A stretch of 64,000 nt of DNA. Origin: Phaeosaccion multiseriatum. Taxonomy: Eukaryota > Protista > Ochrophyta, other classes. The stretch is taken from assembly GCA_965112735.1 (NCBI GenBank), contig OZ218952.1, forward strand, positions 3,286,001 to 3,350,000, given 5' to 3'. Position 1 is the stretch's first letter. Each line of letters begins with the position of its first letter. The notes under the pieces are model-generated. The model was not told where the DNA came from. It made no database searches and saw only the letters and a program-made list of their open reading frames with translations. Of the stretch, positions 19,283-51,284 are shown piece after piece. The translations under genes were made by a program, and so were the position numbers.

Positions 19283-19287
19283 CTCTC

Positions 19288-19385: not shown

Positions 19386-19703
19386 ATACCTTATGACAAG
19401 GTTCTGCTACTCTCTCTCTCTCTCTCTGTACACACCCGTATGTTTTGAGGTACTTCTAAGTAAATGATAGGCGCAAACGCTTTGTGCGGGGAGCGAACGC
19501 ACTCCTCTCGGCTCAGCTCAGCTCAGCTTAGTTCACTTCAGCAGTACTCCAATCCGCGTCCCTGCTGCCCCCCTACCTCCCCCCCCCTCTCCCGCTCCTC
19601 ATGATGCTGTTGCTTCTTCTGCTTGAACTTCTCCTCGGATCCTCCTGTCCCCGTCTTGCCCCTGCCGCCGCGGCCACTCCCAGGGACCCAACTAGAGTCC
19701 CAA

Positions 19704-22700
19704 CTAGAGTCCCAGCCCCCCCTCCCCCTTCCCCACCCCGTCCTCTTCCTCCTGTCCCTCCTCCTCCTCCTCTTCTTCCTCCTCCCCCGCCCCCTCCCCG
19801 CCATTCCACGTGCCGCTGGCCATACTCACAAAGACGGGGTAGCCGCGGTGAAGGCGGAGGGCCCGCACGAGGGGATTGGCTTGGCGGTTTCTGTAACCGC
19901 CGTAACCGTCCGCGTAGAAGCGCTGTCCCTCTTGGGCCTCCCACGCCTTGAGCAAGCCGCGCAGGCCTTCCAATACAGTCTATGGGTAAGTCAACGAGTG
20001 GGTGACAGAGTGAACGTGGGGGATTGACTGTTTGGTCGATTGGTTCGTTGGTTCGTCCGGTCGTTGGTTGAGCGGGGGTGTGTGCAGCAGCATCACACAC
20101 TGCAGCAGATGGCAGCAGATGGCAGCACTCACTCATGGACTCACCTCCGCCACGGTCTCGTCATCGGTGGACTCCGCGAGACCGACGGCAAGGGCACGGG
20201 CCGCCTTGCTCTGATTGGGGTGAGTGAGATGGGCAAGTACATGCAATTGGGGGGGGGTGAGGGAGTTGGAAAGCCAACATGAGTGAGTCCTTATGCTTTG
20301 CCGACCCTTGGTCCCGCCCTGCCCCTCCATCCACTGCCATCCCTCCATCCCCATCCACTGCCATACTCACCGCATGCTCTGTGGGCGTGGGGCACTTCCC
20401 CTCCTGATAAAGCTCCTCCATCAACGCCTCACCCAGAGCAATGGCCTCGCCACCAGACAGACAGGCCGCTGGGATGCGGGGTGTCAGGGCAAGCAGGGCA
20501 TGGGGGGGGGGGGGGGCGGGTGTCAGGACATGCGGTGATGGAGCGCTGCGGACTCGAGCCTTCTACTTACCTGCCCCTGTGGCACCTGTATCACCAACTG
20601 CTGCGGCTGCTAGAGCAGGGTTCCCGGCCATGGAGGCGTGCCCGACAAAGCTCTCCAACGCCACCACCTTCAGGGCCCGCAGCAAACTTCTGCTCAGGAG
20701 GGAATGGGAGGGGGGGCATGCACGCACGCACGTATACACACACGCGCACACGCAGGCGGGTGAGTGTGAGTTGAGTGAGTGAGTGAGTGAGTGAGTGAGT
20801 GAGTGAGTGGTGCTTCGATGCATGTGGGTAGATAGATACCCAAGCGTGACCACCCCCCATCCCCATCCACTGCCATCCTCCCTCCCCACCCTCCCCCCCA
20901 CGCACCTCCTTGTTCGGGCCCGGTGTACGTCGAGCATGGCGGTTGCGGCCTTCCCAGAGCGGTTTGAGCCATTTCTGCCACCGTTTCTGCCGTTCGCCGG
21001 CCCGAAACCGCTCACTGAGGCCCCCAAAGCCATGGTGGTCGCCAGGATGCTGCCCATATGACTGCCCCTACGGCTACCCATATGCCTGCTCTTACGCCTG
21101 CTCTTGGCCTCCTCGCTCTCTCGACGGACGGCTTGCAGCGCCCGGAGGATGGGCAGGAGGAAGTCGTTACTCAGCAGCCGAGTCACGCCTTCAAGGGGAG
21201 GAGGGGGGAGAGGGGAGGGGAGGGCAGGGTAGGGGAGGGGACAGAGCAGCAGCAGTTGGTGACGGTGTAGGGTAGTGAAAGCATCCGTAGGATATAGGGG
21301 ATGGGGGAAAGGGTAAAAGGCGTAGGGCTTGGCGTGTGGGGTATAGCATATGGATACAAGGGTGAGTGGGGGTGAATTTGAGTTTCAAGTGTGCCGTACC
21401 TCCTGCTCCGCTCAGCGCCACGCGAAGCACTGTGGCCGCAGCTGCCGAAGTTCGCTCTGCACTGGGCAGAGCCGAGAACCGCGACGAAGGAGGAGGAGGA
21501 GGAAGGGGAAGGGGGAGGAGACTGCCGCCTCTGTCTCTTCCTCTTTCTCCTCCCCCTCTTGCTCCTTCTAGACTCCCTCTCCTTCCTGTGGCTTCTCCTC
21601 CTCCTCCTCCTCCTCCTCCTCCTCCTCCTACTCCTCCGCCTGCTCCTGCTCCTGCTGTTGTATCACCAACTGCGCTACCCCTGCCCACCGCCTCAATCAC
21701 TCCTCTCAACTCCCCTATAAAGTAGCGCTGCAGCAGCAAAGTCGCGAAGGCCCCCACCTCGTCATTCCACCTCCTCTCCCCCACGCGGATGGCACCAGAC
21801 GCCAGTGCATGAAGGCGATCGAAGCCCCCTAAGCCGCCCATCAACCCCCTCGAGGCCAGCACGCGCTCCACCACCGAGTTCACAGGTCCGGATACACGTC
21901 CTGACACCACCTGTCCTGCTCCAACGAGCACGTCGGCTGTCCTGACACCATTCCCTCGACGTCCACGCAGCCCCCCTGGGGTGGTCTCATGCCCCCCCGG
22001 GCTGGAGTCACTATCCTCACACCAGCTACTTCGGACGCCCGAGGCGAAGGCGAGGGGCCCGACCCCGTCCTTGCTGCCACTGTCCCCGCCCCCGCCCCCT
22101 TTTCCACCACCCCCTCGTCGTCGTCCTTCTCCTCCTCCTCCTCCTCCTCCTCCTCCGTGTGCTTCTCCTTCTGCTGCTGTCGCCTGTTCCTCAGCGACAA
22201 CAATGGAGCTTCTCCGAGGACGAACGGAGCCGCTGCCACCGTCTGTGCCTGGACATCCTCTTAATGCTTGGGTCACGTGGAGACCCACTTTCATGGCAGC
22301 GGAGGCCAGTGAGGAGCCGAAGCTCCGCCCTGCGGCAGTTGGTGATACAGCTTCACCACTATCATCAGCTTGTGATGCAGCACAACCATCACCAGCACCA
22401 GCACCCCCGGTAGCAGGATCAGGAGCAGCAGCTGCAGGCGCAGCAGGAGGAGGAGGAGCACCGCCCCCGGCCCGCTGTTGATGGGCTCCGCCCTCTTCTC
22501 CTTCTTTCCCTCCCTCCGCCCTACCACCCCCGTAGCTCCCAAAGCTGCTGACGCTGCCCAAGCTACTGCCGAAGCTTCCGCTGGTTCTGGTCCTGGTCCT
22601 GACCCTACCACTCATGCCCATATGACTGCAACTACCACTGCTTCCACCGCTGCTGCCGCTTCTCCTCCTCAACTGGCGACTGCTGCTGCAGTCATATGAG

Positions 22701-25700
22701 CCCCGGCTGTGGATGTCGAGTGCGCCCACCGCCAGCAGATTAGAGAGCACCTCCAGCACGCTGAGCATGTCCACAGCCACCTCACCCCCCTGGGGATGAT
22801 GCCCCCTCCCCCCGGGGTGGGCCGCCCGCCCCCCGGGGTAGCTGTGAGGGAACCCTCCTCCTCGGCCCGTTCCGTTGGTCCTGTCTGCTGCCCCTGCTGC
22901 TGCGGCGCCGAACACACCCGCCGTGGTGGGAACGCCATGTTGTCGTGGGCGCGGAGGGAGGGAGGGAGTGGGGGAAGTTAGGACGACGGGGGGTAGGAAT
23001 GGGAAGGGGGGGCTGCAGTCGAGCCGGAGTAGCAGGAGGGGGAGGGCGGTCGAACTGTAGTAACTGTAGTAACTGTAGGAACGGAAGGAACGGTAGGAAC
23101 TGGAGCGGGAGGGCGGTCCAACCGCTCTCAAGAGAAGCGGGGCACGCGCAGAGGGGAAAACGCCACCGCATCGGAATGAGTGCCGCCTTGCCGCCCGCAC
23201 CCCCCCTCCCCTTCCTCTCTCTCTCTCGCTTCTCTCTCTTTCTCTCTCATTCTCTCTCTCACACACACAATCTCTCTCCAGCTCTCTCTTTCTCCCTCTC
23301 TTCCCTCTCAGTCTCACTCACCTCCAAAGAGGATACCTCCTCCTCCCAAGGCCATCAATCGCCGAGCTGCCCTCAGTCCCCGCCAGCCTCCCGGGGAGGA
23401 AGAAGAGGGATCGCCGCCTCGATCGCTAGGCCCCCGTGTGTAGGGCGTAGACCTAAGAAGGCAAGGGAGAAGAGGATGGCAGTGGATGGGGGGAGGAAGG
23501 ATGGCAGCGGATGGGGAGAACGGAGGCTCAGGCAAAGCACAATTGGGGGGGGGGGGGGCGCTACAGAAGCTTCAAAGTACTCCGTCCCTCCGTCCCTCCC
23601 TCCCTCTCTCCCTCCCTCCCTCCCTCCCTCCCTCCCTCCCTCCCTCCCTCCCTCCCTCCCTCCCTCCCTCCCTCCCTCCCTCCCTCCCTCCCTCTCTCCC
23701 TCCCTCTCTCCCTCCACCCCTCTCTCTCTCCCTCCCTCTCTCCCTCCCTCTCTCTCTCTCCCTCCCTCTCTCCCTCCCTCTCTCCCTCCCTCTCTCCTTG
23801 CCTCTCTCCTTGCCTCTCTCCCTCTGTGTCACCTGCAGGGCTTGTGGTGTGTGTTTCTGGCGAGGCCTCCGTGCAGGAGAGAGAGAGTCGCCTCGAGGAC
23901 CTGCATGCCTCCCCACTCGTGCAGCAGCAGCTGGGCTGTCCACTTGTCCCGCCCTGCACCGTTCATACACCAGATGGTGATGCAGCAGATGGTGATGCCG
24001 CAGGTGGAGGAGGAGGCGGAGGAGGAGGAGGAGGAGGAGGAGGAGGAGGAGGAGGCGGAGGAGGAGGAGGAGAAGGAAGAGGAGGAAGAAGAGGAGGAAG
24101 AAGAGGGGGAGATGGGTGCATGAACAAACACAACCGCGCAAACCCACCCACACGCCCGCACGCACGCCCACACGCACGCACGCACTCACCCTCCCCATCG
24201 CCGCTGCTGGCCGCCTCCATTGTTCTCCCCCTGTCGGTAGGATGTGGCACGGCCGTCAGCAGCAGCGCTGCCTTCAGTGCAACCCTCCGCACATCCCTCC
24301 ACTCGCCCGAGTCCTCCATCCTCGCCCTCCGACGGCGGCGGCGGCGTTGACCGCCACGTCCAGTGCCATCGCCATAGCCAATACTATAGACGGAGGCTCT
24401 TCTTCTTCGCTTGCCTGTCCCTCCTGCTGGACGAGCATGAGCGGCCGTACCCACCCACTGCATCCCCCATCCCTCTCCTTGCTCATCTTTCACCGAGGTG
24501 CTAGGGCCCATTGTAGTGCTATCAAAGCTGCTGTGGCATCTACCTTTGCCCAAACCACCACCACCACCACCACCACCACCACCTCCTCCTCCTCCTCCTC
24601 CTCCTCCTCCTCCTCCTCCTCCTCCTCCTCCTCCTCCTCCTCCTCCTCCTCCTCCTCCTCCTCCTCCTCCTCCTCCTCCTCCTCCTCCTCCTCCTCCTCC
24701 TCCTCCTCCTCCTCCTCCTCCTCCTCCTCCTCCTCCTCCTCCTCCTCCTCCCTCTGTGTCACCAACTGACACTCTGCTGCCCCATCTGTACTTGCCTCTC
24801 CCAAACCAAGACCACCTGCCTGTCGCCTTCCCCGCTCTACCCTTGCTGCTGTGCTCTCCTCTCCCTCCTCCTCTTCCTGCTGCTTCTCCTCCTCCTGCTC
24901 CTCCTCCTTCTCCTTCAGGCCCCTCCTCCTCCCCCTCCTCCCCCTCCTCCCCCTCCTCCTCCTCCTCCTCCTCCTCCTCCTCCTCCTCCTCCTCTGTAGG
25001 GGGGCAGAGCAGCCTCGCGAGAGAGATAAGTGCACCACCCTGGAGGAGGGCGACTCGCTGAGCGTGAGTGCGGATCTTGGTCATCTGGGGGCATATCGAT
25101 CGGCACGCACAACCAGCCACGAGAGTAAGTCAGCAAAGCTTCGCAAGGTCAAGGGGTCAGCACTGCAGTACGTGAACGAATGTGTGGTAGGCGACGCCTC
25201 TCACTCGTACCTGAAGGAGACTCTCCAGTAAGTGCAGCAGCGTTTGCACGCTCTCATCTTCCCCCTTCCCCGCTTCCTCCCCCTCCTCCCATTCCTCTCC
25301 CTCCCCTTCCTCCTCTTCTCCACCAACTTCTCGTCCTCCTCCTCCTCCTCCTGCTGCTGAGCGTGTGTTGCTCGCTCCCCTCCCCCTCCCCCTCCCCCCC
25401 CCGTCCCCCCACTGCCGGAGCCTTTGCAGTAGTTCCGCCCCCCCCCCGCCAAAGTCCGCGCTGTCGCCGTCGGTCAAGAAGTCTCTCCCTATAACAGAGG
25501 CCCTAAGCTGTAACTGCCGAGCGTGCAGTAAGAGTTTCCGCTCTCTGGCTGCCTTGCTGGCTGTCGTCGACGCCCCTCCTCTCGGGAACCTCGTCCTTCC
25601 CCTGCCTCCCCTTCCTCCTCTGTGGCTGCGGTGGAGGGAGGACGAGAGTGCGTCTTCGGCTTGGTAGATGGCCACTGCTTGTGCCCTGATGGGGAGAGAG

Positions 25701-28700
25701 GATGGGATGGCGGCCATGAAGTAATATGAATCAGGGTTAAGCAGTGTTAATCAGTCCCAACAACGCAAGTGCAATAGCACTAGAAAACAACACTACGAAA
25801 CGCTTAACGACACAATAGCGTGACGCCACAAACGAAACACAACATTAGCATGACGTGGCACTCCGTACGGCTTACCTGCACCAATCCGCCTCCGCCCTCC
25901 CTTTGAGCTCCTCGTAGAGATCGTTGAGGAGAGAGACAAGGAGGTTCAACATCACCATCACCACTACAACCGTGAACAGCACCATCAGCAGGTAGCTGAA
26001 GGGGAGAGGAGGAAGAAGGGAGGGAGGAAAAGAGAGGGAGGGAGAGGAGGAGGGAGGGAGGGAGGGAGGGAGGGATCGGAAGGAGGGAGGGAGGGAGGGA
26101 GGGAGGGAGGGAGGGAGGGAGGGAGGGAGGGAGGGAGGGAGGGACGGGAGGGTGTCAGGACAGAAAGAATGAGCAAAAGTGAGGGCCGGGCAGTCGGGCG
26201 GCGACAAAATGCTGAGGAAGGGAGGGGAGGGAAGAGGCTGTTCCGTGGCTTTGTGGCTCTGTGGCTGGCGTGTCGACTTGGCACAGCACACACCCAGAGG
26301 AGCGACAATCGAATATCTACGCCATCTGTGAACCGTACCGCCATCCGTTGTACAGATTCTCGTCTCCGATATCGGAGAAATTGAACTCTCCCAGGGCCTC
26401 CGGATACTGAGAGGGACCGGGGGACAGAGGAGAGGGGACAGGCGAGAGGGGAGAAGATCGAGGGAGCAGGGACGACGTCAAGGGAAGGGGTGAGAGACAC
26501 AGCCGCGCAAGCCCGCCTGCCCGTATGCGTGTGCCCGCCTCTATGCCCGTATGCTTTTCCACATGCTGCCTCTATGCCTCTAGATGTCTCTATGCCTCTA
26601 GATGCCTCTTCCGGGACGGACCTGCGTGGCGAGGGAGGCGGCGATGCTCCTGTGTCCGGCCTCGAGCTGCGACAGCATCGAGTACCTGGTGTCAGGCAAG
26701 AGGTCCGTTGGTCCATGGGGTCGGCCAGTCAATTAGTCATTCAGTCAGTCAGGGCAGGCAGGCAGGCAGGCACACAGGCATATGGGCAGTTTGTTCGTCA
26801 AAGGAGATGCACAGCTCAGTACCAAGGAGAATTGGAGTGTGCGTGTGTATGTGTGTGTGTGCGTGCGCGTGCGTGCGTTAGTCCCCGCCCCCCTCGTTAC
26901 CTGGCGAGTGCCCAGGCCATATACAGCACGGTGAGGAGCGGCGCGAAGCTCTGCACGAGCTTGCCGAACATGAGGACGATCATCTTCACTAAGAGATACA
27001 GCGACTCGAACACGCACTGGAGGGGCTCCAGCAGCTGGAGAGGCGGGGGGAGGGTGGAGGGGCAGAAATGGGGTGGATGGCAGTGGATGCGTGGGTGGGT
27101 AAGACGGATGGGTGGTGGTGGGAGAGTGAGTGGGTGTGTGTGTGTGTGAGTGGGTGTGTGTGGGGTGGGGTGGGGTGGGGTGAATGTCTGGTATGCTTCC
27201 TCCCACTGAGCCACCCTCAAGGGCACCCTCGCATGTCTCTACCTAGCTATGTCCTCATGCAGGCCAGCGGCAGGGTGAGGGCCTCTAGCTGCTCCTGTCT
27301 GCCCGTATGCTTCTAACTACCCATGTGCCTCTAACCACATACCTTGATCCAGGCCAGCAGCAGCGTGAGTGACGTCACAACGCGTTCGGTCTGCTCCAAC
27401 TCCGCAAGGCGCCGCAGGTCCACATAGGTGTCTCGACCCCCCCCACCACCGCTCTCACTATAGTCATTGGCGTCAGGACTGTCACCCAGTCTGCTTAGGT
27501 CAAGGCTTCTCAGCTCAAGGGCCTGAAGCACGTTGAGCGCGACAAGGTACACATGGAGGGAGATGAGGATAAGGTCGAGCAGGTTGAAGAGGTTGAGCCA
27601 GTAGTAGGGCCCCAGTGTGCGCAGCTCTTGGCCCTCCTTGCAGAGGAGCATCATGACCAGAAAGAGGAGGGCGATGTCCGAGGCGCCTGCATGTGTAAGG
27701 GGGAGGAGGAGGAGGAGGGGGAGAAGTGGGAGGAGTGGGGCGAGAGGAGATGGGAGGGTGAGGAGGGTGAGGAGGGTGAGGAGGGTGAGGAGGGTAAGGA
27801 GGAGGAGGAGGAGGGGGAGAAGGAGGAGGAGGAGGAGGAGGAGGAGGAGGAGGAGGAGGAGGAGGAGGAGGAGGAGGAGGAGGAGGAGGAGGAGGAGGAG
27901 GAGGAGGAGGCTGATGGCGAGGGCAAGGAGGACGAGAACGAGCACTCACTCACTCACTCACCAGCGGCGGTGTCGGCCTCGTTCACGGCATCATCTCGGA
28001 AACCGAATCCCCTTACTGTTCCTTCGTGGAACACGTTGAAGGCGTTGAAGGTGGAGAAGCGCAGCGTGGAGACGGGGTGCGCCCCCGAGGGGAACTCCGT
28101 AAGTAAGCGTATGTAAGAGAACTTATGCATGGCAGGGCTGTACACCGACAGCTCCGCCATTACGGCTCGAGTGGCTCCGTCCAGCCAGGCCGAGTCCTTG
28201 AGGGAGGCGATTAAGGTTTCCGCGTCGGTCTGATTGATGGGGAGGTACTGCACGAAGGCTCCCTTGCCGTACACCCCTACCTTGCCCGTGCTACCCTGGA
28301 CGTGGGCAAGGGGAGAGAAGGTGAAAACCTCACTGTCCCTCCCACTGCTGCTGATGCCTCCACCGTAAGGCCTCGTGTCAGTGGACTTTGTTGTGCAAAC
28401 ATTTCCATCTGAGTGTGCGCAGTAGTTGTGGAAGCAGTAGTCGATCACGCCCTCCATCTCACCCCATACGGGGCAGCTGTCGTCCTGAGTCCTCCACGTG
28501 CTGAGCTTGACCCCACCGAGCACCAGCCCGGACCCAAGCACAAAGACCCTGTCATTCCGACGACGCCGCACCTCACCATCACCCTCACCCTCACCATCAC
28601 CATCACCATCAACACCCCCTTCTCCTTCGTCTCCTCCGTCGTACCACTCCGTATCCGCAGCGTTGCTGTTGCTGGCAAAGAGTAAGGTGGACAGAGGGCC

Positions 28701-30005: not shown

Positions 30006-30077
<72 letters not shown>

Positions 30078-32389: not shown

Positions 32390-32423
<34 letters not shown>

Positions 32424-41375: not shown

Positions 41376-41423
<48 letters not shown>

Positions 41424-42150
41424 GCACGCACAGCCAGATTGTACCCCACGGCAGACAGAGGCAGGCAGAAGGCACCCAAATAGACAGAGAAGAGAGGCAA
41501 AGGCCGTAAGGGGGCGCCCTGTCACATCGATCGATCGATCCATCGAGAATTACGCTCCCTCCCTTCCTCCCTCCCCCGTCATCCACTGCCATCCACTGCC
41601 ATCCTTTGCATACCAGCGTGGCGAGTCTCTCTGCGCAAAGCTTGGCAAGGGCCCCGATAACGTGTCTCATCTGCGCCGGGGCGTTGCCTTGCCTCCACAG
41701 GAAGAGCCAATTGCGCCGTACGGCCTCCGCGATGGAGCCGCACAGGCTAAACACAAAGTACTCGAGTCGGCTGTGGGCTCCGCGGAGCTGAGTGGGGAGG
41801 GGAGGGGCGCAGAAAGAAATGGGGAAGACATCGGGGGCGATGGAGAAGGGGGGGGTAAGAGTCACGTGAGGAAGGCAGCAATAGCGGCAGCAGTTGCTGA
41901 CACATCAGATGGGAATACAGCAGCAGCAACATGTCGAGAACGAGAGAGAGAGAGAGGGAGAGAGAGGGAGAGAGAGAGAGAGAGAGAATGACTGCAAGTG
42001 AAGGAAAGGGGCACCGAACTTTCGCCCCCAACCATTAAGCACACCACACGAGCAGCTGTCCGCGCACCGACTACGCATCCATGCATGCCCGCACGCACGC
42101 AAGCACCCACCCACACAAACACACATACACACACGCACACACATACACAC

Positions 42151-42222
<72 letters not shown>

Positions 42223-45200
42223 CTCTGTGTAAAGGAGCCTCGCTGGGCACGGCCCTCTCCCCCCGAGGGCGGCTCTTGCTGGCGAGCGTAAACACCCCGG
42301 ACAGGAGTATCTCCTGCTGCACGAGGCCAGTGATGGAGTACGCTTGGCCAGACGTCATCAGCAGAGACTCGCGTCCGTAAGAGCGGCTAAGGAGGGGAGG
42401 GAGGGAAGAGGAGGGGGAAGGGAGAGGGGTTTTTTGGGGGGGGGGTGGGGGGGGGGAGGAACGGAGTGAAAGAAGGGGCCGAGAGGAAGGAGTGAAAGAA
42501 GCGCGTCACTGGGTCAGCAATGGAAGGCGATAGTAGGGTTGCACACGCACACGCACCGTACGCTCCCATGTACGTACGCACGCATGCACGCACACTTGAT
42601 CAAACCGAACACCCACTCCCCCCTCCTCCTCCCCCATCATCCACTCACCCAGCCGGCCTATCCGCCACCGCCGGTGGAAGCAGTCCAAAGTCCCCCTCCC
42701 CGTCCCCCCCTGCAGCCTCGTACGCCCCCGCCCCCCCCCCCTGGCCCTTGTTGGCATCCTCATCCGCGCCAGTCGCCAGCCTGTTGAGCAGCCGGACTGC
42801 CAACACCTGTGCCTGCTTGAGCTGCAAGAGCCGCCGCGTGTACATGCCCATTCGAGGCGTGTGGGCCTCCCGTCGCCTCCTCTCGGCGCGCTGCTTCACA
42901 TGCTCTAGCCTCTTCTTCTTGTCGGCCCGTATGCCTGCCCGCAACCTTTCACGGGCCTCCTTCCTCTCTCTGAGCACCTCCCTCCTCGCCTCCCGTCTGC
43001 TGCCATCGCCACCCCCACCCCCGTCTCTCTTGTCTCTGTGACTGTCCCTACCTTTCGGCCTGTGCATACTCTTCGCACCCTTTAGACCCTTGAGAAAAGC
43101 GGCGTCGGTGTCAGGATCTGCTCTTCCCTCCCTTCTCCTGTCCTCCTCCCCCTCCCCGCCCTCGTCCTCCTCCTCCTCCTCCTTGTCCTCCGAGCTGGCG
43201 TCTGAGCCTGTCTCTATCGAAGAGAATGAGGTTGAAGTATCGTCTTCCTCGTCCTCGTCCACGTCCTCGTCCTCGTCGCTCTCGCTCTCGCTCTCGCTCT
43301 CCTCCTCCTCCTCCTCCTCCTCATCATCATCATCACCATCATCATCATCATTCTCTAGTTCATTGCCGTACTTAGACCCCTGGGCCGCCGTCGAGCCCGC
43401 AACCCTCACCTCTGCTCTCCCTCTTACCCCTCTTACCCCCTCCTCCTCACTCCCTCCCTCTCCCCCGCCCCCGCCCCCCCTCAGCAGACTCTTCCGACTC
43501 GAGTCCGCCATCACCACCTTCATCAACAAACGCCAGAGAGCGTACATGACCCCGGCTTGATGCGAATAAGCCACCACGGGGATCTGCAACAGCGCATCCA
43601 AGCAAGCCTGCTTGTCGATGAGACCTTTCAATCCGAGCTCTACAAATGGCGCCAACGCCCCTGTGGTGGAGAACTGCTGGAGCACCACCGTGTGCTGTGA
43701 GAGGGCGCTGAGGCTGCTTGCCACCTGGTGCATCGGAGGAGTACCGAGTGTCAGGCAAGTGTCAAGTAAGGAGGGCGGAAGGAGGGAGTAAGAGTGACAG
43801 TAGGCAGCAAGTGGCATTAAGTGCCAAGCCAGTGTAAGGGAGAAGGGGAGGGAGGTGAGAGTAATGAACCTGGTGCCAGAGGAGTACCGAGTGTCAGGTA
43901 CAAGGAGGGCATGAGGGGGTGAGAGTGCGAGCAGAGTTCAAGTGTCAAGCAAGTGTCAAGCAAGTAGAAGAGCCTGAGAGAGGGGGTGTCCTTCCTTGCC
44001 TCCTCGAGCACCCTGATCTGATGCGGAAGCTCTCCCCTCCGCACGGCAAAGTCCCGCGCCTCCCTCTCCGCCCTCGTGATGGTCTTGGTGAGCTCGAGTT
44101 TCTCGTTCTTGCCTGCTGGCACCTCATACACCACCTTGGAAGGGGGCATGGGGGTGGATGGGGAGGGGAGGGATGGCAGCGGATGGCAGTGAATAGGGGG
44201 GGCGAGTGTGAGTGGTGGTGAGGAACAGAGCACGTGACCCTCGCTCCCTCCCTCCCTTCATTCCTCCTTGCTTCCGTCCCTCCTTGCTTCCGTCCGTCCG
44301 TCGCCCCCTCCCTCCCTCCCTCCCTCCCTCCCTCCCTCCCTCGCTGCATATCCTGCCCTCCCTCCCTCCCCCCCTCCCTCACCCTCCCTCCCCTCCCTCA
44401 CCGTGACTGAATCGTCTTCATTGTCGACGTCCTTTGGCTCTATTCGGACGATGGGCCTCCACAGATTGTTGTTCACAACGAGGTATGGCCGGCGGAAGTC
44501 AGGCTCGCTGGAAAAGCTCTCCGGGATGCATCTGGTGCCAGCACACCAAGAGGGAGGGGCAGCAATTGGTGATCCAGCAGCTAAGGGGCCGCCTGATGAG
44601 CGTCTTCCTGTATCACCAACTGTTTTGCTTTGCTGGCACCATTCTGAAACGGAGTGGAGGCCTCTCTGCTCGCCTTCATGTCTGACTGTCTGCCTGCCCA
44701 TGTGCCTGCCCATATGCCTCCCCATGCGCCTTACTACCCCTTATTAACCCGTACTAACCCCTACTAACCGACCGATCGATCGACGGACTCACTCCTCCCC
44801 CTTCACGTACTCACCTGCGCTGCACTTGTTTAAAGAGCGGGTCCGACTCGGCAAAGTCGTAGAGCCTGACGATGGCCCTCAGCGCGTCTGCCCTCTCCAC
44901 TAACTCGGCGTTGCGGGCACTACGACAGAGGTTGGCCATAGCCTTGGCCACGAGAAGCAGAGACGCGAAGGAGCACTGCAGGGGCAGGTTGCGGCAGTTG
45001 CTGCTTGCCGTATCACCACCTGCTGCGGCGGCTTCTCCACGAGCGCTGCCGCGGCTGTTCCTCCTGCTCCTCGGGGTGGAGGTCTGCCCGCGATGCTGCT
45101 GCTGCTGCTGCTGCCTCTGCTCGTGCCTCTGCTGCCTCTGGTCGTACTCGCACTGCATCTGCAAGGCGCTCTCCCTCTTAATCCTCTCGATGAGGCCATG

Positions 45201-48200
45201 GGGAGAGAGGACGGCTCTGCTGAAGGTATCAAAGCCCCCGTGAGCTCCAATGGCAGCCTGGTCCTCCTTACCCTCCGTAAAGTGCGCCAGCAGCCACGCC
45301 ACGAACAACAGGATGGCTCCCTGCCTCTCCTGCCGCTGCCTCTCCAGCCTCTCTCTCTCCGACACCACTCTGCCCCCCCCGGGCACCGGCCCTGACCGAG
45401 AGTGGGGCATGGCCTGCGAGTGGGACTCCGACTGGGACAGTGACTGAGCCAGTGACTGGGCCTGCAGGTGAGGGAGAGGAAGGTCCGTCCGGCTGTACCT
45501 CTCCCCCATGCCCCCCTTAGGGTGGGGGTGCCCTTGCCGCAAGGGATCGGAGAAGGTGCGTGTAAAGCCCAGTACCCCACCACCACCACCACCACCGCCC
45601 GCCCGTCCCCTGGGCTGGGCCGCCCCCCCCCCTGCTCCTCCCCCGCCATCCCCTGGACCAAGGCGGTCAGTGTACATATGGACCTCCAGGCACTGCAGCA
45701 TGTCGACGATGTGGTGCGGGGGCAGGGGAGGCCTGGGCACGTTATCGAACACCACTCCTGCACTGGCCCCCAGAACGTCCAACTCCAGAGTGTACCTTGG
45801 GCAAGCAAGTCAGCAAGTTGGTGAGGGGCAAGTAGGCAAGTTGGTGAGGGGCAAGGACGTCAACGCGCAAGTAAGTCAGGTAAGCGGGTGCAGCTCTAGA
45901 GGAGTATGTGTGTACTGGTTAGAGGAGTATGGGTGTACTGGTTAGAGGAGTATGGGCAGGTGCGCCTTCACAGGTTAGCTAGCAAGGACGGAATCAAAAT
46001 GACCGGTCCCCAACCACCAAGCACACACGACTCGGAAACAAACAAACCAACAAGCAAGCATGCTTCCTCCCCTCCCCTCCCCTCCCACGACCCACCTTAT
46101 GAGCTGTGGCACACTCGATCCATGGCAGATGCGCAAGCGGATCATGCACCAGAGGAAGCGCGTCACCTCGAAGCGAACGTTCTGGAACTTGAGCTGTCGG
46201 TCCCTCCGCTCCAAGGCATTGAGGTTGAAGTTGCCGAGGATGTCTCCGAGCTCCGTGAAGCGGCTCAGAAAAGTCCGAAGGGCTCGCTGGAGCTGCAGTA
46301 CATCGCTATCGGTGTCCATGTCTATCCCTGTGTGCCCCCGAAATCCTCCGCCCCCTTCTTCGTCTTCCATCACCCCCCATCCTCCTCCTCCTCCTTCCGC
46401 TCTACTCTCTCCCCCTCCTTGTCTTTGCTCCCACCGTCCTCCCCCTGCCATCATTGCCCCGTTGTAATTCGCCTGCTCGTCGAACATGTGACCCCCACCT
46501 TGCTGCTGTATCGCCAACTGCTGCTCATCGTAATACCGATCCGCGGCGTCGTAGTCCCGCCCCGCCCCGCACTGCTGCTGCTGCTGCTGTAGCACCAACT
46601 GCTGCTGCTCGTACTGCTGCTCAAACCGTCGCGCATGCTCACGACGATAATGACATCGCTGGTAGTGATGCCACCCGTCGCCCTGCTGATACAGCGGCAG
46701 ACAGAGCGCCGCCAGATTGGCAAACGTGCCGAGGACCCTCTGATGCATGTTCTTGCGTTTGTGGGTGGTGATATGCGAGAAGAGCGTCGCCAGGAAGCCC
46801 TTCTCCGTATGCCCCGGGGTGGACGTAATGTAGTCAACCAGGTGTGCCGTGCAGCTCCTCATGGCCGCGAGGTTCTGAAGGGCGGAGATGACTCGCCGGA
46901 GCACGTCATCCACTTCGTTTGAGTCGCACAGACGTTGCACCAACAGGTCAAGCATCTCGGGCTCCACCTTTTAGGGTGGGTGGGTGGGTGGTCAAGAGGG
47001 GGTGGGCGGGTAAGTTGGTGGATGGGTGGGTGGGTCGAGGGGTGGTTGTCCAAGGTGGGTGGGAGGTTGGTTGTCCAAGGTGGGTGGGTGGTTGGTTGTC
47101 CAAGGTGGGTGGATGATTCAAGTTGGGGTGTTCTACAAGGTGCAGAGCATTATACGCAGCGCACGAACTCTGTTTCTCCTCTTTCTCCCTCCCCTCCTCT
47201 CCCCTCTCCTCCCCTCCATCCCTCTCTCCCTCCATTCCTCTCTCCCTCCCTCGCCTCCCTCGCCTCCCTCACCACCCCCTCTCACTCACCAGCCGCACGC
47301 CGTTCTCCGTCTTCTTGCTGAGGTTCCATACCACACAAGCCATGTTGAGCCTGCACGCCGCCACGTATCGATCCGTCCTCGCCCTCCCCTGCACCTCCTC
47401 ATCCCCCAGCCAGCGCAGCAGGGCGGCCGGGATGGCCTCATCTGCGGCTTGGTACATCTGTATCTTGGAGTCGTCGTGCCAGGAGAGCTTGCAGAGGAAG
47501 GCACTCACCACCACCTGGAGAGGGGGCAACGAGCATGTGTGTGTGTGTGTGTGTGTGAGTGAGAGTGTGCGTGTGTTTGAGTGAGAGTGTGCGTGTGTTT
47601 GAGTGTGAGTGTGCGTGTGTGTGAGGGAGAGAGAGAGTGTGTGTGTGTGAGTGTGCGTGTGTGTGAGGGAGAGAGAGAGAGTGTGTGTGTGTGTACATGA
47701 GAGCGTGTGTGTTGTCATTCCCTGTCACCACCACCCCCCCCATACAACCAACCCTTGACCTTGGTCCATCCTCTCCGTACCACCCCCTCCCAACACCCCC
47801 CCCCCCCAGACAACCAACTCCTGACCTTGGTGGCCAACTGTGAGTAGTTGAGATTGACACACAGTGCCGGCAAGGTCACGAGACACACATCCCCGAGCCT
47901 CCTGGTGGCTTCGCTCACACTCGAAGTATCCCGTGCGTCCCCATCGAGCGGACAGAGACAGCACAACAGACCCACGAGGGACTGGAGAGCCACCTCGGCG
48001 GATCTGCAAGGGGGAAGGGGCAATGCTCCTGCTGCTGCTGCCCCTGCCCCTGCTCGTTGTCCTGCTTCTATACTTGCTTCTGCTCCTCCTCCTGCGGCTG
48101 GTGCTGAGGCTGACGCTGAGGCATCCCCCGGGGGGGAGGAGGAGGTGAAGAAGGAGAAGAAGGAGGAGAACGACGGAGAGCTGGCGACGCCGCCCCCCCC

Positions 48201-49728
48201 ACTTGTACCACCAACCCCCCCACCGCCGCCAGCGGCAAGCGCGGGAGGAGGGGCCAATTTCCTCCCCCCCTCCGTGTCCGCCAAGGCTTCCTCTTGTTTC
48301 CCATCGCCTTCTCCCCCCCTCCCCCCCCTTCCTTCCCCTCCTCCTCTTCCTCCTCCTCCTCCTCCTCCTCCTCCTCCTCCTCCTCCTCTGGCCTGACCCT
48401 CGTGGGCGTGGTGCGGATGGGTGCGGCTGTGGTTGTTGTGATTGTTGTGATGGTTGTAGTGGCTGTGATTGTTGTGATGGTTGTAGTGGCTGTGATTGTT
48501 GTGATGGTTGTAGTGGCTGTGATTGTTGTGGTGGTGTGCGGATCGCTGGCGCCTGCGCTCGAGCTGCTCCTCTCTATCGAAGGCCTCCACGGCATTGGTG
48601 AGGCCTATGCCAGCCACCTGAATACCGAGGGCGGGGGAGGGGGGGGAGATTGGCGCACGCACATGCACGGCTGGGGGTATGGAATAGGAAGGGGTCACCA
48701 TGCCATACCGTGCCAGTAGGCAGAGAAGGTCTGTTCTCCTGGACCCAGTGGAGCAGGAGGGCTTTCATCCTGACACCCAGCAGGGGAGAGCAAGCAGAGG
48801 AGAGGGAGGACCTTTTACCCTGAGACCCCCAACACACTCACGATTCGGAGCATGTCTGGGTTGCCCTTCAGCACCCACTTGAGCTTCGAAGGGAGGGAGA
48901 GAAAGCGCAGATAGTCCGCCATAGGGGCGAGCTCCCAGGGGCTGCCATGGACGACCAGATGCTTCAGGCGGGCCACAAGCATGCGCATCAGAGCGCGCAG
49001 CACCACGGGGGGTGACGACAGGCTTCGGGCCACGAGACCCCACGTGCATCTCCACACCTTTATAAGGACGGGGGGGTCGAGGAGGGAGGGAGAGAAGGGG
49101 GAAGAAGTGGCGGAGGGAGGGGGGGAGGGCGGGCAAGGAGGTCGATAAGGCTGCTGATTGACTGACTGACTGACTGAACGATCCACTGAGCAGCTGACCC
49201 ACTCCCTCCCTCGCTCCCTTTCGCTCCCTCTGTCCCTCCTTCCCTAGGCGATCCACATTCGTCCGGAAAAGGAGTTTGTAGCTCCCATGGCGCGTTTTGT
49301 TTCTCAGAGCACCTTCGATGGCGTCGTCCAGGAGAACATGGACGACTTCGACATTGACGAAGGAGGAAGCTTTGAAAGACGCAGTCAGCCAGTTTGACTC
49401 TCAAGGTGAGTGAGACGAGCAAGCGCTCAACGGGCTCACAATCAGGCTTAAGGCTTATTCCCCGCTTCCAGGGTGTCGGTGTTGTCCCTCCCTCCCTCCC
49501 TGCCTCCCTCCCTACCTACCTGCTTCTGATGGTTGATCTTTTTTGCCACTTTAAGAGCCTTGACCCTGTCCAGTGCGCCGCTCTTGTGTGCGAGGAGCAG
49601 CACCACGGCCTCTCGCAGAGGCTTGATGCGTTCCTCCGCCATACGCCCACTGTTCACGTTCACCCCCGCGGGGCACACATTGCTCACAGCACCAACAGCC
49701 GCACCGGGTCCTCCCCTCTCTCCTCCTC

Positions 49729-49766
<38 letters not shown>

Positions 49767-50955
49767 CCTCCTTCCTCGTGTGTTTGGGCGGCAGCAGGGC
49801 CGGTGGGCTTGGCGCTGGGCTCTGGCCCCAACTGCTGCGCCTGATGACCCTCCTCGGCGCCCATGCCTGCCTCCTCGAGAGCCTCTGCAATATCCTCCGG
49901 CGCGTAGTGCAGCGCTCGAAGAAGGTCCATGCCACTCACGTTGGTCACCTCGTGCTGCAGCTTGGACTTTCCGTCCTGAGGGATGTGGGAGGGGGTTTGC
50001 GTCATTGGCAGCGGCCCAAAAGCGTGAGGCTCGTCCACGCGGTTGTTGTTTTTCATTCAGTGGACAAAGAATCAAACCCAAAGTGCTTCCCCTCCTTTAT
50101 GCTCTTCCTCTTCCTTCCTCCTTCCCCTCCTTCCTCTGGTCTTACCTGCGCGTTGAACCAGGCCGTTACTTCTTCGCATGTCATGCGAGTCAGATCCACC
50201 GCCGCCACTTGCTTCCTCAGGTTGTCCCCTCGGTCCACAGCTTCCCCTGTTCCAGTGGGGTCATCCCCTCCTCCCCCTCCTCCCCCTCCTGCTCGTCCTC
50301 CTCCTCTCGCTGCCCCCGCCGAAGAAGAAGCCGCAGATTCTTGTTGGGGCTTTGCGAGAGCTCTGTACGCGGACGGATTGCTGCCGCTACCGTTACCGCT
50401 ACTATTATTGTCAACTCCTCTGGGAAGCCGCGGTGGCGATGGCTTTAGAGCTGCGATTGGGCCCACTGTTGATGCAGCGGCCCTGCTCCCTGGAGCACCG
50501 GTGGGAACAAGCTCGCCGCTGTCCGCCCTACTCATGAAATCGGAAGGGCGACGCACGGGGCTCCCTGCGGGACTCTTGAGTTGGGAGAGCTTGGAGGAGA
50601 GGGGCGTAGGGCTTCTGGGGTTGGGGTGAGGGCTAGGACCCAGGCTTGCAGGCGGAGAGGGGGATCTGATGCTCTTTGCTGCCCCCCCTCTGCCCGCATC
50701 TTCCACTGCGGCGGCTGCTGCTGCGGTCTCTTTTCCCCTTCCCTCTTGTAAAGACAAGTTTTTACTGGCTGCTGCGGGCTCGTCGCCTACCTTCTCCCCT
50801 CCCTCGCCTGGCCATGCACGACTACTCGTTGCCGCCATCGTCGGCACCGCGGGGATCTGAGCTTTGTCCCCCGCTTTATGGGGAAGGGACGTGCCGTCGT
50901 CCTCCTCCTCCCTCTCGTGCTCCCCTGGTCTCGCTGCAATATTATTTCTCTCCAT
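19704..50955 (-). CDS. Giant multi-exon protein: SAM - ARM/HEAT-like repeats - IQ - SAM - ankyrin repeats - polycystin/TRPP-type cation channel - TRP-like helix - ARM-like tail
   Basis: ATG at 50955. About 44 exons can be chained with GT(GC)-AG sites and matching phases down to ~19.7 kb; a few junctions below ~23 kb and the 3' end (19538-19704) are uncertain. Roughly 20 kb of coding sequence by hand summation. The domain evidence is given in the sub-features; the model could split into two genes. Confidence 0.65.
24555..24750 (-). repeat. Coding (GGA)n(GGT)n tract giving ~65 consecutive Gly
   Basis: (CCT)n/(CCA)n on the + strand inside the exon frame of ORF 23963..25120. Confidence 0.85.
25660..29040 (-). 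CDS. Polycystin-2 (PKD2/TRPP)-like channel domain exons of the giant gene
   Basis: S1: [21 protein letters not shown] domain: [73 protein letters not shown]2/S3: [27 protein letters not shown]4: LLLAWIKLLEPL. S5: [14 protein letters not shown]. Pore: [24 protein letters not shown]6: [18 protein letters not shown], followed by [17 protein letters not shown]. Confidence 0.88.
29725..31748 (-). CDS. Ankyrin-repeat exons of the giant gene
   Basis: [89 protein letters not shown]. Confidence 0.9.
30720..30877 (+). repeat. (GTCA)n intronic microsatellite (another at ~37511-37715)
   Basis: Directly visible. Confidence 0.9.
34205..35214 (-). CDS. SAM-like domain (second) of the giant gene, interrupted by poly-Gly
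   Basis: [19 protein letters not shown]|SLCEGFQ ... [35 protein letters not shown] fits the SAM pattern W..e.V..WL..i.L..y...F....G..L..L..edL. Confidence 0.55.
35345..35562 (+). repeat. Intronic minisatellite, 12/24-bp unit (cccatatgcctg)
   Basis: Tandem cctgcccatatg/cctgcccatacg units. Confidence 0.9.
36577..47514 (-). CDS. ARM/HEAT-like helical repeat region of the giant gene, including an IQ-like motif at ~37415-37450
   Basis: [65 protein letters not shown]...[47 protein letters not shown]; IQ-like [15 protein letters not shown]. Confidence 0.7.
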
Positions 50956-51284
50956 CCTCTATGCGCCCGGCATAAGCCTTCTCCCTATCCCGTCATATCT
51001 TGCGTGCTTCTGCCGCCTTCTCGTACTCAAACCTGCCTTGGCTTGTCTGACTGGCTCAGTATTGTCCACCGATTTTCATGGCCAAAGGCTTGATACGGAT
51101 ACTCGATACTCTGCACTCTGGACGGAAGGTGGAAAAATTCGATACAACTGTATCAAAACCTGGACGACGGGATATCACGACGGTTGCATGTCCTTGACGT
51201 GGTGGTCATTTATGAATGTTGACAAATGGCAAACCTACGCCCCTCCTTCCTTTCCAGATAAAAGATCATCCACACCAACAAAGC
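50956..51284. promoter_or_regulatory. Putative bidirectional promoter (giant channel gene / ankyrin-BTB gene)
   Basis: Divergent ATGs at 50955(-) and 51285(+), separated by a locally AT-richer spacer. Confidence 0.5.

What the first reader, a model, noticed from the sequence alone, without database searches (positions are those of the whole stretch)
19704..50955. A ~6,500-aa polycystin-type channel with SAM, ARM, IQ and ankyrin modules in one gene
Seen: phase-consistent exons can be chained from ATG 50955 through SAM-like, ARM-like, IQ-like, second SAM-like and ankyrin segments into a full 6-TM PKD2-like channel and on into further ARM-like helices, without meeting a stop. Established: canonical TRPP/PKD2 channels have the TOP domain but no ankyrins, whereas ankyrin-bearing TRPs (TRPA/N/C/V) lack a TOP domain. 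Inference: a hybrid group1/group2 TRP architecture with a very large cytosolic scaffold, possibly a tethered mechanosensory or flagellar Ca2+ signalling hub. I do not recognise this architecture.
Basis: partly seen in the sequence, partly recalled or inferred. Interest (0 to 1): 0.8.

Follow-up and report, generated by a model that had tools for sequence, protein, structure and literature searches.

The report
Giant algal polycystin channel with scaffold
One 31-kb gene of a brown-alga-related microalga encodes a polycystin-2-type ion channel preceded by several thousand residues of armadillo, SAM and ankyrin modules; this design is conserved in related algae, I found no paper describing it, and it would be among the largest TRP-type channel subunits.

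Summary
The finding is essentially real. On the minus strand, 50955 to 19704, about 30 homology-supported exon blocks lie in the same order as relatives' loci. One relative, a Tara Oceans scaffold, encodes the whole architecture as a single uninterrupted 4,168-residue reading frame (P0027). Other single-protein versions have 3,669 to 3,835 residues.

- **Weakly conserved:** the long C-terminal tail.
- **Not confirmed:** the N-terminal "SAM". The IQ motif is only sub-threshold.
- **Size:** 6,500 residues is an upper estimate. The excess over the relatives is mainly (GGA)n-type low-complexity sequence that could be coding or intronic; my range is 4,600-6,500.

The channel domains of this family form their own branch among PKD2-like channels (support 99/97). 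Members occur in brown algae, Chrysoparadoxa, Heterosigma and marine metagenomes, always unnamed and mostly as fragmented gene models. I found no paper describing the family. The scan had not reported this gene before.

I rate it a new variant of a known kind. Function is inferred: a tetrameric cation channel with a very large cytosolic scaffold.

The parts
50146..50955 (-). Exon 1. ATG at 50955 (alternative in-frame ATG near 50183). About 250 low-complexity residues, then the conserved motif ...[13 protein letters not shown]. Donor CAG|GTAAGA after 50146.
   Evidence: Sequence read. The junction WFNAQ|[10 protein letters not shown] matches the uninterrupted L002 sequence WFREYDGAGKLQHDV. Orthologues have at most about 50 residues before this motif, so the true start is uncertain.
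49517..49975 (-).
   Evidence: tblastx to L002 2038-2274 and to L006. No SAM signal.
43512..48005 (-). N-terminal helical (armadillo-like) region: seven homology-supported exon blocks (48005-47835, 47517-47287, 46967-46062, 45806-45180, 44521-44447, 44134-44000, 43727-43512).
   Evidence: Collinear with L002 2572-4767 and with P0027 residues 263-936.
37894..41772 (-). Central armadillo-repeat region (blocks 41772-41698, 40538-40449, 39855-39175, 38457-37894). Pfam Arm repeat at about 38007-37906.
   Evidence: Pfam Arm, E 4e-7, 30.3 bits against a cut-off of 20.6. Collinear with L001, L002, L003, L004 and L006. Arm also found at the equivalent place in P0027.
37379..37495 (-). IQ-like motif, [19 protein letters not shown].
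   Evidence: Translation. Only sub-threshold IQ hits at the same position in the orthologues P0027 (E 0.03) and P0110 (E 0.11), and none in the window itself.
34177..35233 (-). SAM domain, split by an intron (about 35042|34756) and by a (GGA)n-rich insert. Blocks 35233-35048 and 34332-34177.
   Evidence: The blocks align to L002 7654-7809 and 7915-8070. The AF2 model of L002:7756-8763 matches SAM domains at VIA Z 11.1, rmsd 1.7 A over 84 aa, with SARM1/TIR-1 SAM at Z 10-10.8 and 23-27% identity.
32065..33672 (-). Conserved alpha/beta middle domain ending in the block ...[32 protein letters not shown]. It lies in the 969-codon open frame 34821-31915. Donor after 32065.
   Evidence: Blocks at 33672-33625, 33240-33178, 32643-32554 and 32115-32065 all sit in one frame. 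In the model the strands have pLDDT of about 80. The fold match is weak only (kinase N-lobe-like sheet, Z 5-6).
29716..31747 (-). Ankyrin-repeat region, about 6-7 repeats in five exons (31747-31634, about 31295-30912, 30644-30492, 30285-30091, 29865-29698).
   Evidence: Pfam Ank_2 E 1e-7 and Ank E 3.6e-6. Collinear with all five relatives' loci. Orthologues give Ank_2 at E 1e-24 to 1e-36.
28937..29164 (-). Pre-S1 helix and transmembrane helix S1 (…[21 protein letters not shown]…).
   Evidence: 55-59% identity to P0001, P0002, P0005 and P0155. Translation.
27975..28796 (-). TOP / polycystin domain (extracellular S1-S2 loop). Pfam match at about 28553-28047.
   Evidence: PF20519, E 2.1e-19, 70.3 bits. 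It has 440 relatives in the representative library.
25876..27686 (-). S2-S6 pore module in five exons: S2-S4 (about 27686-27343), S4-S5 linker plus S5 (about 27034-26901), pore helix (26702-26622), filter [10 protein letters not shown] (26409-26335), and S6 (about 25995-25876).
   Evidence: PF08016 at 21.8 bits on one exon. tblastn to P0001, P0002, P0004 and P0006. Translations. The orthologue P0001 aligns to PKD2L1 5z1w at E 1.3e-33 with LGE opposite LGD.
19704..25750 (-). C-terminal cytosolic tail. Conserved patches at about 25685 (AQAVAIYQ…), 23963-23871, 21826-21701 and about 20470-20371; micro-exon 20210-20145; last exon 19979-19707; stop TAG 19706-19704.
   Evidence: blastp/tblastn to the P0001 tail (E 1.4e-5) and the P0003 tail. 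Junctions read. No Pfam family. Downstream of 19.7 kb there are only microsatellites.
51216..53045 (+). Neighbour, not part of the gene: a divergently oriented 609-codon ORF for an ankyrin-repeat protein. It bounds the 5' side.
   Evidence: Pfam Ank_2, E 7.8e-38.

Best explanation
The stretch 50955-19704 (minus strand) is one gene of about 40 exons. It encodes a giant member of the polycystin-2 (TRPP/PKD2-like) cation-channel family.

Shown: the order of modules is
1. a conserved N-terminal helical domain;
2. a long armadillo-type helical region;
3. an IQ-like motif;
4. a SAM domain;
5. a conserved alpha/beta domain;
6. about 6-7 ankyrin repeats;
7. pre-S1 and S1, the extracellular TOP domain, and S2-S6 with an L-G-E filter;
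8. a long, weakly conserved tail.

The same order is encoded as a single polypeptide in relatives.

Inferred from what is established for PKD2 and PKD2L1:
- Four subunits form a non-selective, Ca2+-permeable cation pore capped by a TOP-domain ring.
- The whole 2,700+-residue N-terminus and the tail face the cytosol, because hydrophobic helices of transmembrane strength occur only in the channel part.

Further inference, not tested:
- The cytosolic assembly regulates or anchors the pore.
- SAM-SAM contacts add oligomerisation.
- The armadillo and ankyrin solenoids bind partners or the cytoskeleton.
- The IQ-like helix could give calmodulin/centrin feedback.

The subcellular site (flagellum or elsewhere) is unknown.
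For: One gene:
- The window blocks from 49975 to 23871 are collinear with L002 2038-12307, and from 40538 downwards with L001, L003 and L004.
- P0027 is one uninterrupted 12,507-nt ORF (L006 10001-22507, 'translates to query: yes'). It aligns in order to every L002 ORF and to the window.
- P0037 (3,835 aa), P0110 (3,810 aa) and P0283 (3,669 aa) share the layout.
- The window's 969-codon frame 34821-31915 bridges the boundary between two annotated Discosporangium models.
- The Choristocarpus model P0155 runs from the middle region through the ankyrins into S1.
- No family-bearing ORF lies on the opposite strand inside the span.

Channel identity.

Distinct lineage: the 9 family rows are separated from 49 other PKD2-like rows by a branch with support 99/97, present in 100% of bootstrap trees.

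Topology. SAM fold. Armadillo. Ankyrin.
Against: - There is no transcript or protein evidence for the window's own organism. Internal promoters or separate transcripts cannot be excluded.
- Existing annotations of brown-alga relatives split the locus into two to four models.
- Exon boundaries outside the junctions I read are heuristic. The dynamic-programming model is demonstrably wrong at exon 1.
- Much of the length excess over the orthologues is pure (GGA)n and similar microsatellite sequence, which might be intronic.
- Conductance, selectivity, oligomeric state, partners and location are all inferred.
- No EF-hand or coiled coil like that of animal PKD2 was found.
Confidence: 0.85

Rival explanations
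1. The locus is one gene, but the mature protein is close to orthologue size (about 4,000-4,800 aa). On this reading the (GGA)n-, (GCA)n- and poly-Glu-type tracts, which stay in frame and stop-free, are removed as introns, perhaps of the introner-like kind noted elsewhere in this genome. The '6,500 aa' would then be an artefact of reading through them.
For: - Orthologues have 3,669-4,168 aa.
- The poly-Gly runs are pure (GGA)12-46 microsatellites without synonymous variation.
- L002 has an ORF break, that is an intron, where the window stays open across 46698-46271.
- Thirteen of the 14 in-gene copies of the dispersed, strand-polarised motif GTTGGTGATACAG lie in these spacers.
- The bounds computed from the DNA are about 4,600 to 6,500+ aa.
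Against: - Five conserved blocks in the 969-codon frame are all in one frame, as expected for one exon.
- One motif copy lies in plainly homologous coding sequence (ELVIQD, about 39991).
- Triplet repeats are tolerated in coding sequence.
- There is no RNA evidence either way.
Confidence: 0.4
2. There are two or more adjacent genes: a cytosolic SAM/armadillo scaffold protein and a separate ankyrin-PKD2 channel. They would be kept next to each other and merely look fused when open frames are chained.
For: - The Discosporangium annotation has two models (737-9287 and a 5'-partial 10001-21950).
- The Chrysoparadoxa annotation has four small models.
- The metagenome gene calls P0001, P0003 and P0004 start just before S1.
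Against: - The split models are partial or begin at internal Met codons. Conserved coding sequence lies in the annotated 'intergenic' gap (L001 9378-9446).
- Ankyrin ORFs lie directly upstream of P0001 and P0004.
- In the window, one open frame spans the supposed boundary.
- Single ORFs of 3.7-4.2 thousand codons exist in four divergent relatives.
- In L002 the gaps between ORFs are under 100 nt, leaving no room for promoters.
Confidence: 0.08
3. It is not a working channel but a polycystin-1-like receptor or a decaying pseudogene that merely retains PKD-like segments.
For: - The same genome holds several giant polycystin-1-like receptors (unchecked notes) and at least five loci with a polycystin domain.
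- The filter has E instead of D.
Against: - No GPS, PLAT or REJ domain in the full-length orthologues.
- Only the six-helix module is hydrophobic.
- All of S1-S6, the pore helix and the acidic filter residue are intact and open in the window.
- The gene is conserved across distant algae.
Confidence: 0.05

Closest known systems
Animal polycystin-2 family (PKD2, PKD2L1; TRPP)
   Same: - S1, TOP domain and S2-S6 layout.
- Orthologue P0001 aligns over the whole core to PKD2L1 (5z1w, E 1.3e-33) and PKD2 (5t4d, E 4.9e-27).
- Acidic residue in the L-G-D/E filter.
   Different: - About 2,700+ extra N-terminal residues (armadillo, SAM, ankyrin).
- No EF-hand or coiled coil detected in the tail.
- Separate branch in the channel tree.
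- Subunit 4-6 times longer.
Chlamydomonas PKD2 (flagellar; cited in PMC6744473)
   Same: A protist PKD2-type channel that is longer than the animal ones.
   Different: I did not compare sequences here. From my own knowledge, not tested, its extra length is mainly extracellular loop, not an ankyrin/armadillo/SAM cytosolic scaffold.
Oomycete PKDRR proteins (PKD2-type channel fused to ryanodine-receptor 'R' domains; PMC7399828)
   Same: A stramenopile PKD2-type channel with lineage-specific cytosolic additions. The paper shows that such fusions occur in this supergroup.
   Different: No RyR domain was found here (Pfam). That paper does not report an ankyrin or armadillo PKD channel.
Ankyrin-bearing TRP channels (TRPA1, NOMPC/TRPN, TRPV, TRPC)
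   Same: Ankyrin repeats directly N-terminal to the pre-S1/S1 region of a six-helix tetrameric cation channel.
   Different: - Those lack a TOP domain.
- The pore here is PKD2-like. The best group-1 hit, TRPV6, reaches only E 4e-4 against 1e-33 for PKD2L1.
- Only about 6-7 repeats, against 29 in NOMPC (repeat number from my own knowledge).
Cyanophora paradoxa ankyrin-PKD protein (P0085, EukProt EP00741_P021290, 1,717 aa)
   Same: Many ankyrin repeats, then Polycystin_dom, then PKD_channel in one predicted protein.
   Different: - No armadillo/SAM scaffold.
- Its channel domain falls outside this family's branch, so the ankyrin fusion is probably independent. Its position is on a long branch and unsure.
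SARM1 / TIR-1 (armadillo region followed by SAM domains)
   Same: - An armadillo region followed by a SAM domain.
- The SAM here is most similar in sequence to SARM1/TIR-1 SAM among the structural hits (23-27% identity, Z 10-10.8).
   Different: - One SAM rather than a tandem pair.
- No TIR domain.
- The resemblance is a lead about oligomerisation, not membership.

Membership tests
TRPP / polycystin-2-like channels | TOP (polycystin) domain in the S1-S2 extracellular loop | tested here: met
   PF20519, E 2.1e-19, 70.3 bits on window:27957-28916:-, directly after S1.
TRPP / polycystin-2-like channels | Six-helix PKD_channel / Ion_trans pore module (S2-S6, pore helix, filter) | tested here: met
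   Tested exon by exon. PF08016 scored 21.8 bits on one exon, against a cut-off of 22.4 for a whole protein. The S4-S5, S5, pore and S6 exons align to P0001, P0002 and P0006 and are open. The orthologues pass the cut-off.
TRPP / polycystin-2-like channels | Sequence relationship to solved PKD2/PKD2L1 over the whole core | tested here: met
   Tested on the closest uninterrupted orthologue, P0001: 5z1w E 1.3e-33 and 5t4d E 4.9e-27. The window's own joined protein was not searched.
TRPP / polycystin-2-like channels | Acidic selectivity-filter residue in the L-G-D motif | tested here: met
   The window has ALGEF. In the alignment, LGE of P0001 lies opposite LGD of PKD2L1. Glu replaces Asp.
TRPP / polycystin-2-like channels | Cation conduction as a tetramer | not testable with these tools
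   Needs expression, electrophysiology or cryo-EM.
Animal PKD2 proper | C-terminal EF-hand and coiled coil | tested here: not met
   No Pfam family in the window tail ORFs or in the tails of P0027 and P0001.
Polycystin-1-like 11-TM receptors | GPS/REJ/PLAT domains and eleven membrane helices | tested here: not met
   None of these families appears in the full-length orthologues. Strongly hydrophobic helices occur only in the six-helix module.
Ankyrin-bearing group-1 TRP channels (TRPA/N/V/C) | N-terminal ankyrin repeats before S1 | tested here: met
   Ank_2, Ank and Ank_4 on window exons at 31.3-30.1 kb, immediately upstream of the pre-S1 exon.
Ankyrin-bearing group-1 TRP channels (TRPA/N/V/C) | Group-1 pore module without a TOP domain | tested here: not met
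   A TOP domain is present. PDB hits to TRPV6 reach only E 4e-4 over the S5-S6 part, against 1e-33 for PKD2L1. The channel clusters with PKD2-like sequences.
SAM domain (middle of the protein) | Five-helix SAM bundle | tested here: met
   AF2 model of the orthologous L002:7756-8763 (pLDDT about 80 in this part). The top 23 VIA matches are all SAM domains, with Z up to 11.1 and rmsd 1.7 A over 84 of 87 residues. Pfam itself does not detect it.
SAM domain (N-terminus) | Five-helix SAM bundle or a SAM profile match | tested here: inconclusive
   Only a W-x-E-E-V…DG..LL motif resemblance. No hit in Pfam (E up to 10), in a PDB profile search or in the Atlas, and hhalign against the true SAM gave probability 0.1.
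IQ calmodulin-binding motif | [ILV]QxxxRGxxxR-type helix above the Pfam threshold | tested here: inconclusive
   The window has [12 protein letters not shown], with no Pfam hit. The orthologues give IQ_SCN5A_C at E 0.03 and IQ at E 0.11, both under the cut-offs.
Oomycete PKDRR | RyR 'R' domain fused to the PKD channel | tested here: not met
   No RyR-type family in the Pfam scans of P0027, P0037 and P0110 or of the window ORFs.

The most novel reading that the evidence does not exclude
Ochrophyte algae possess an undescribed class of giant TRP channel: a PKD2-type pore carrying a cytosolic assembly of ryanodine-receptor scale (four subunits of 3,000-5,000 residues each). In it, a SARM1-like armadillo-plus-SAM module, an IQ-like helix and a short ankyrin stack would couple oligomerisation, Ca2+/calmodulin or metabolite sensing, and cytoskeletal or flagellar tethering directly to gating. 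This would be a separate, independent route to a 'giant scaffolded Ca2+ channel' besides RyR/IP3R.
Probability: 0.25. Interest if true: 0.8.

Novelty: new variant of a known kind. Interest (0 to 1): 0.6.

Why it matters
TRP channels are grouped partly by their cytosolic and extracellular add-ons. Ankyrin stacks and TOP domains are usually treated as mutually exclusive hallmarks of the two groups. This family shows a PKD2-type pore that combines both with thousands of residues of armadillo and SAM scaffold, and that has kept this layout across brown algae, raphidophytes, Chrysoparadoxa and marine picoeukaryotes.

- **A natural test case.** It shows how very large cytosolic assemblies might gate a TRP pore, comparable in scale to RyR/IP3R.
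- **A candidate gene.** It is a concrete candidate for the poorly known Ca2+ entry pathways of stramenopile algae (gamete taxis, mechanosensing, stress signalling).
- **An annotation problem.** Current gene models for this locus in published brown-alga genomes appear to be split or truncated, so the family is invisible to domain-architecture surveys.

Tried and rejected
- **N-terminal SAM.** Pfam on orthologue N-termini (E up to 10), a PDB profile search, an ESM Atlas feature search and hhalign against the true SAM all came back empty. The label is dropped to 'conserved helical domain'.
- **Word-indexed homologue searches.** P0002 and P0027:2280-3290 were swamped by unrelated ankyrin proteins. 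P0027:40-1640 found only itself. So no named full-length orthologue was found, but that search is insensitive and a blank means little.
- **Middle alpha/beta domain.** Foldseek gave no match at E <= 0.001. The Atlas and VIA searches gave only weak kinase-N-lobe-like similarity (TM 0.23-0.39; Z 5.1-5.8 over about 60 residues), below what counts. There are no kinase motifs. The fold is left unassigned.
- **PDB search with the armadillo region.** Only E 0.05-1 to designed or 'ARO' armadillo proteins.
- **Heuristic exon finder.** It gives 43 exons and 6,065 aa, but it misplaces exon 1 and the last junctions compared with those I read by eye. I use it only as a size estimate.
- **Single-intron enumeration.** It failed for nine gaps because HSP ends overrun the splice sites.
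- **Opposite-strand ORFs inside the span.** No Pfam family.
- **Joined protein.** I did not search, fold or align a joined spliced protein of the window. All searches used single exons by reference, or natural uninterrupted orthologous ORFs. For that reason the window is also absent from the tree.
- **Rows left out of the tree.** Representatives without near-full channel coverage, and five with envelopes of 700 aa or more.

Full report
**What is there**

The window is GC-rich (about 60%) eukaryotic DNA with GT-AG introns and many microsatellites. It lies on contig 3 of a 67-Mb, 22-contig assembly. Pfam scans of single minus-strand open frames gave four hits:
- Polycystin_dom (TOP), E 2.1e-19, at 28916-27957.
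- PKD_channel, 21.8 bits, at 27945-27334.
- Ankyrin, E 1e-7, at 31376-30870, and weaker at 30642-29926.
- An Arm repeat, E 4e-7, at 38526-37732.

The frames between 50.9 and 39 kb and below 25.8 kb gave nothing credible.

**Relatives**

A full HMMER search with the TOP exon found 440 relatives. The best are:
- P0001, 1,062 aa, on a JGI metagenome contig (L002).
- P0002, a 953-aa 5'-partial model from the brown alga Discosporangium mesarthrocarpum that carries ankyrin, TOP and PKD channel (L001).
- P0005 from Chrysoparadoxa australica (L003).
- P0006 from the raphidophyte Heterosigma akashiwo.

tblastx shows the window's minus strand to be collinear, block after block:
- with L002 from 49975 down to 23871 (L002 2038 to 12307);
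- with L001, L003 and a more AT-rich metagenome locus, L004, from about 40.5 kb down to the channel.

About 30 window frames carry such blocks.

**One gene or several**

Four observations settle this as far as sequence can.
1. The window's 969-codon frame 34821-31915 contains five conserved blocks in one frame. It spans the place where the Discosporangium annotation ends one model and starts the next, 5'-partial one. The annotated gap there holds conserved coding sequence.
2. In the intron-poor L002, the plus-strand ORFs from 1933 to 13666 abut with gaps under 100 nt. They are bounded by a divergent LRR gene and a convergent RING gene. One 762-codon ORF runs from the IQ-like helix through the SAM and middle domains into the ankyrins.
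3. The Choristocarpus model P0155 runs from the middle region through the ankyrins into S1.
4. The decisive one: among the long representatives, P0027 (4,168 aa) aligns in order to every L002 ORF and to the window. On a Tara Oceans scaffold with ordinary eukaryotic neighbours (kinase, cullin, PH) it is one uninterrupted ORF, L006 10001-22507.

Pfam on P0027 and P0037 (3,835 aa) gives Arm (weak), several ankyrins, Polycystin_dom and PKD_channel in that order. P0110 (3,810 aa) and P0283 (3,669 aa) share the layout.

No opposite-strand ORF inside the span has a Pfam family. The next gene upstream, at 51216-53045 on the plus strand, is a separate ankyrin protein.

**Ends and junctions read directly**
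- Exon 1 runs from ATG 50955 to 50146 (donor CAG|GTAAGA). Exon 2 starts at 49975. The junction reproduces the uninterrupted L002 sequence.
- Orthologues have at most about 50 residues before the conserved W-x-E-E-V motif. The window would have about 258 low-complexity residues there, so a later ATG (near 50183) is possible.
- Further junctions are 32065|31747 and 31634|31295.
- At the 3' end there is a donor after 20371, a 66-nt exon at 20210-20145, and a last exon at 19979-19707 with TAG at 19706-19704. All are phase 0.
- Only microsatellites follow.

**Domains**

*Channel.* S1, the TOP domain, S2-S4, S5, the pore helix, the filter YPEALGEF and S6 are all open and conserved in the window. The orthologue P0001 aligns to PKD2L1 (5z1w) at E 1.3e-33 and to PKD2 at E 5e-27 over the whole core, with LGE opposite LGD. 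TRPV6 reaches only E 4e-4. No PKD1-type domain is present. Strongly hydrophobic helices occur only in the channel module, so the N-terminus and tail are cytosolic.

*SAM.* An AF2 model of L002:7756-8763 (10-row alignment, pLDDT about 80 in the relevant parts) matches SAM domains. The best is CNK/HYP SAM at Z 11.1, rmsd 1.7 A over 84 of 87 residues. SARM1/TIR-1 SAM scores Z 10-10.8 at 23-27% identity. The first 23 rows are all SAM domains. The window's counterpart is 35233-35048 plus 34332-34177.

*N-terminal domain.* This domain (49975-49517) is conserved but gave no SAM signal by any method used.

*IQ.* The motif at 37495-37379 is IQ-like by eye. Only sub-threshold hits occur in two orthologues.

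*Middle domain.* A conserved alpha/beta domain between the SAM and the ankyrins (33.7-32.07 kb, ending in KVTLELSS…[11 protein letters not shown]) has no convincing fold match.

*Tail.* It is conserved in patches only and has no Pfam family.

**Size**

The orthologues have 3,669-4,168 aa. In the window:
- the spans between the first and last conserved block of each supported frame add up to 3,178 codons;
- enumeration of single introns adds between 389 and 2,555 codons;
- the N-terminus and tail add about 1,000-1,800 more;
- a heuristic splice-graph optimum gives 43 exons and 6,065 aa, but it is wrong in places.

The excess is mostly pure (GGA)12-46 and similar triplet microsatellites in frame. 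A dispersed 14-nt motif, AGTTGGTGATACAG, marks many of these spacers. It has 31 copies in the window against 0.02 expected, and 14 of the 15 copies in the gene lie on the coding strand. However, one copy here lies in clearly homologous coding sequence. I therefore give 4,600-6,500 aa and regard 6,500 as the ceiling.

**Place among channels**

A maximum-likelihood tree was built from 58 near-complete channel domains taken from the representative hits. It separates the nine members of this family from the 49 others by one branch (ultrafast bootstrap 99, SH-aLRT 97, present in 100% of 200 bootstrap trees). The tree is unrooted, so this is a split, not a proven clade.

The other rows include a hemichordate polycystin-1-like protein and the Cyanophora ankyrin-PKD protein P0085, which sits on a long branch. 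P0001 is the window's closest relative found (45% identity over the TOP exon, about 55% in the pre-S1/S1 block).

**How it probably works**

By analogy with solved PKD2 and PKD2L1 tetramers, four subunits would form a cation pore under a TOP-domain ring. The new element is the cytosolic mass:
- an armadillo solenoid of more than 1,000 residues;
- one SAM domain, a common oligomerisation module that is most SARM1-like here;
- a short ankyrin stack placed just before pre-S1, as in TRPA and TRPV channels;
- a possible calmodulin-type binding helix.

All of this is inference. Nothing here bears on the subcellular site, the ligand or the gating stimulus.

**Known or new**

Full-text searches found no description of an ankyrin/armadillo/SAM PKD2-type channel. 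The nearest described case is the oomycete PKD-RyR-domain fusion (PMC7399828).

In sequence collections the family exists only as unnamed metagenome ORFs and as partial or split models from Discosporangium, Choristocarpus, Pylaiella, Chrysoparadoxa and Heterosigma. The scan's own notes list other polycystin-like giants in this genome, but not this gene.

Verdict: a real, conserved, undescribed architectural variant of the PKD2 family.

Noticed in passing
window, 31 sites, e.g. 3217-3788 (+, tandem 33-nt units), 20586, 32247, 32913, 33274, 39979, 40796, 44608 (-): The 14-nt motif AGTTGGTGATACAG (allowing one mismatch) occurs 31 times against 0.02 expected. It almost always lies on the local coding strand and is usually embedded in GCA/GGA-rich low-complexity spacers. 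One copy (about 39991) lies in clearly homologous coding sequence (ELVIQD). Its nature is unresolved.
   Followed up: partly
window 34821-31915 (-): Pure (GGA)n microsatellites of 12, 13, 19, 27 and 46 units lie in frame (as poly-Gly) inside a 969-codon open frame, between conserved blocks. Whether they are translated is unknown.
   Followed up: partly
window 51216-53045 (+): A 609-codon ORF for an ankyrin-repeat protein (Ank_2, E 7.8e-38) sits head to head with the channel gene. Only about 260 bp separate the two candidate ATGs.
   Followed up: partly
L001 (Discosporangium CAXNAE020000388.1) 737-21950; L003 (Chrysoparadoxa CAXMZZ020000106.1) 4629-15785; L002 10001-13189: Public gene models of the orthologous locus look split or truncated. 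Discosporangium has two models with conserved coding sequence in the gap at 9378-9446. Chrysoparadoxa has four small models. The metagenome call P0001 stops at an intron before a conserved last exon (L002 13238-13666).
   Followed up: partly
L002:8290-8763 (+); window about 33672-32065 (-): A conserved alpha/beta domain lies just before the ankyrins. It has only weak similarity to the beta-sheet of a kinase N-lobe (Z 5-6) and no kinase motifs. It may be an undescribed domain.
   Followed up: partly
G000: C10:260021-260906, C14:3033761-3034334, C8:2155755-2156442, C14:1609346-1609519: At least four further loci in the same genome carry a polycystin (TOP) domain. I did not examine whether any has the same scaffold.
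   Followed up: no
window 19455-19084 (-) and introns near 31500-31400 and 20360-20300: A long (CAGA)n-type microsatellite lies just downstream of the gene. A GGCAGTGGATGG-type short repeat recurs in two different introns of the gene.
   Followed up: no
P0085 (Cyanophora paradoxa, EukProt) and P0031 (EukProt g1568.t1): Other protist proteins outside this family also join ankyrin repeats to a TOP-domain PKD channel. The combination therefore seems to have arisen more than once.
   Followed up: partly
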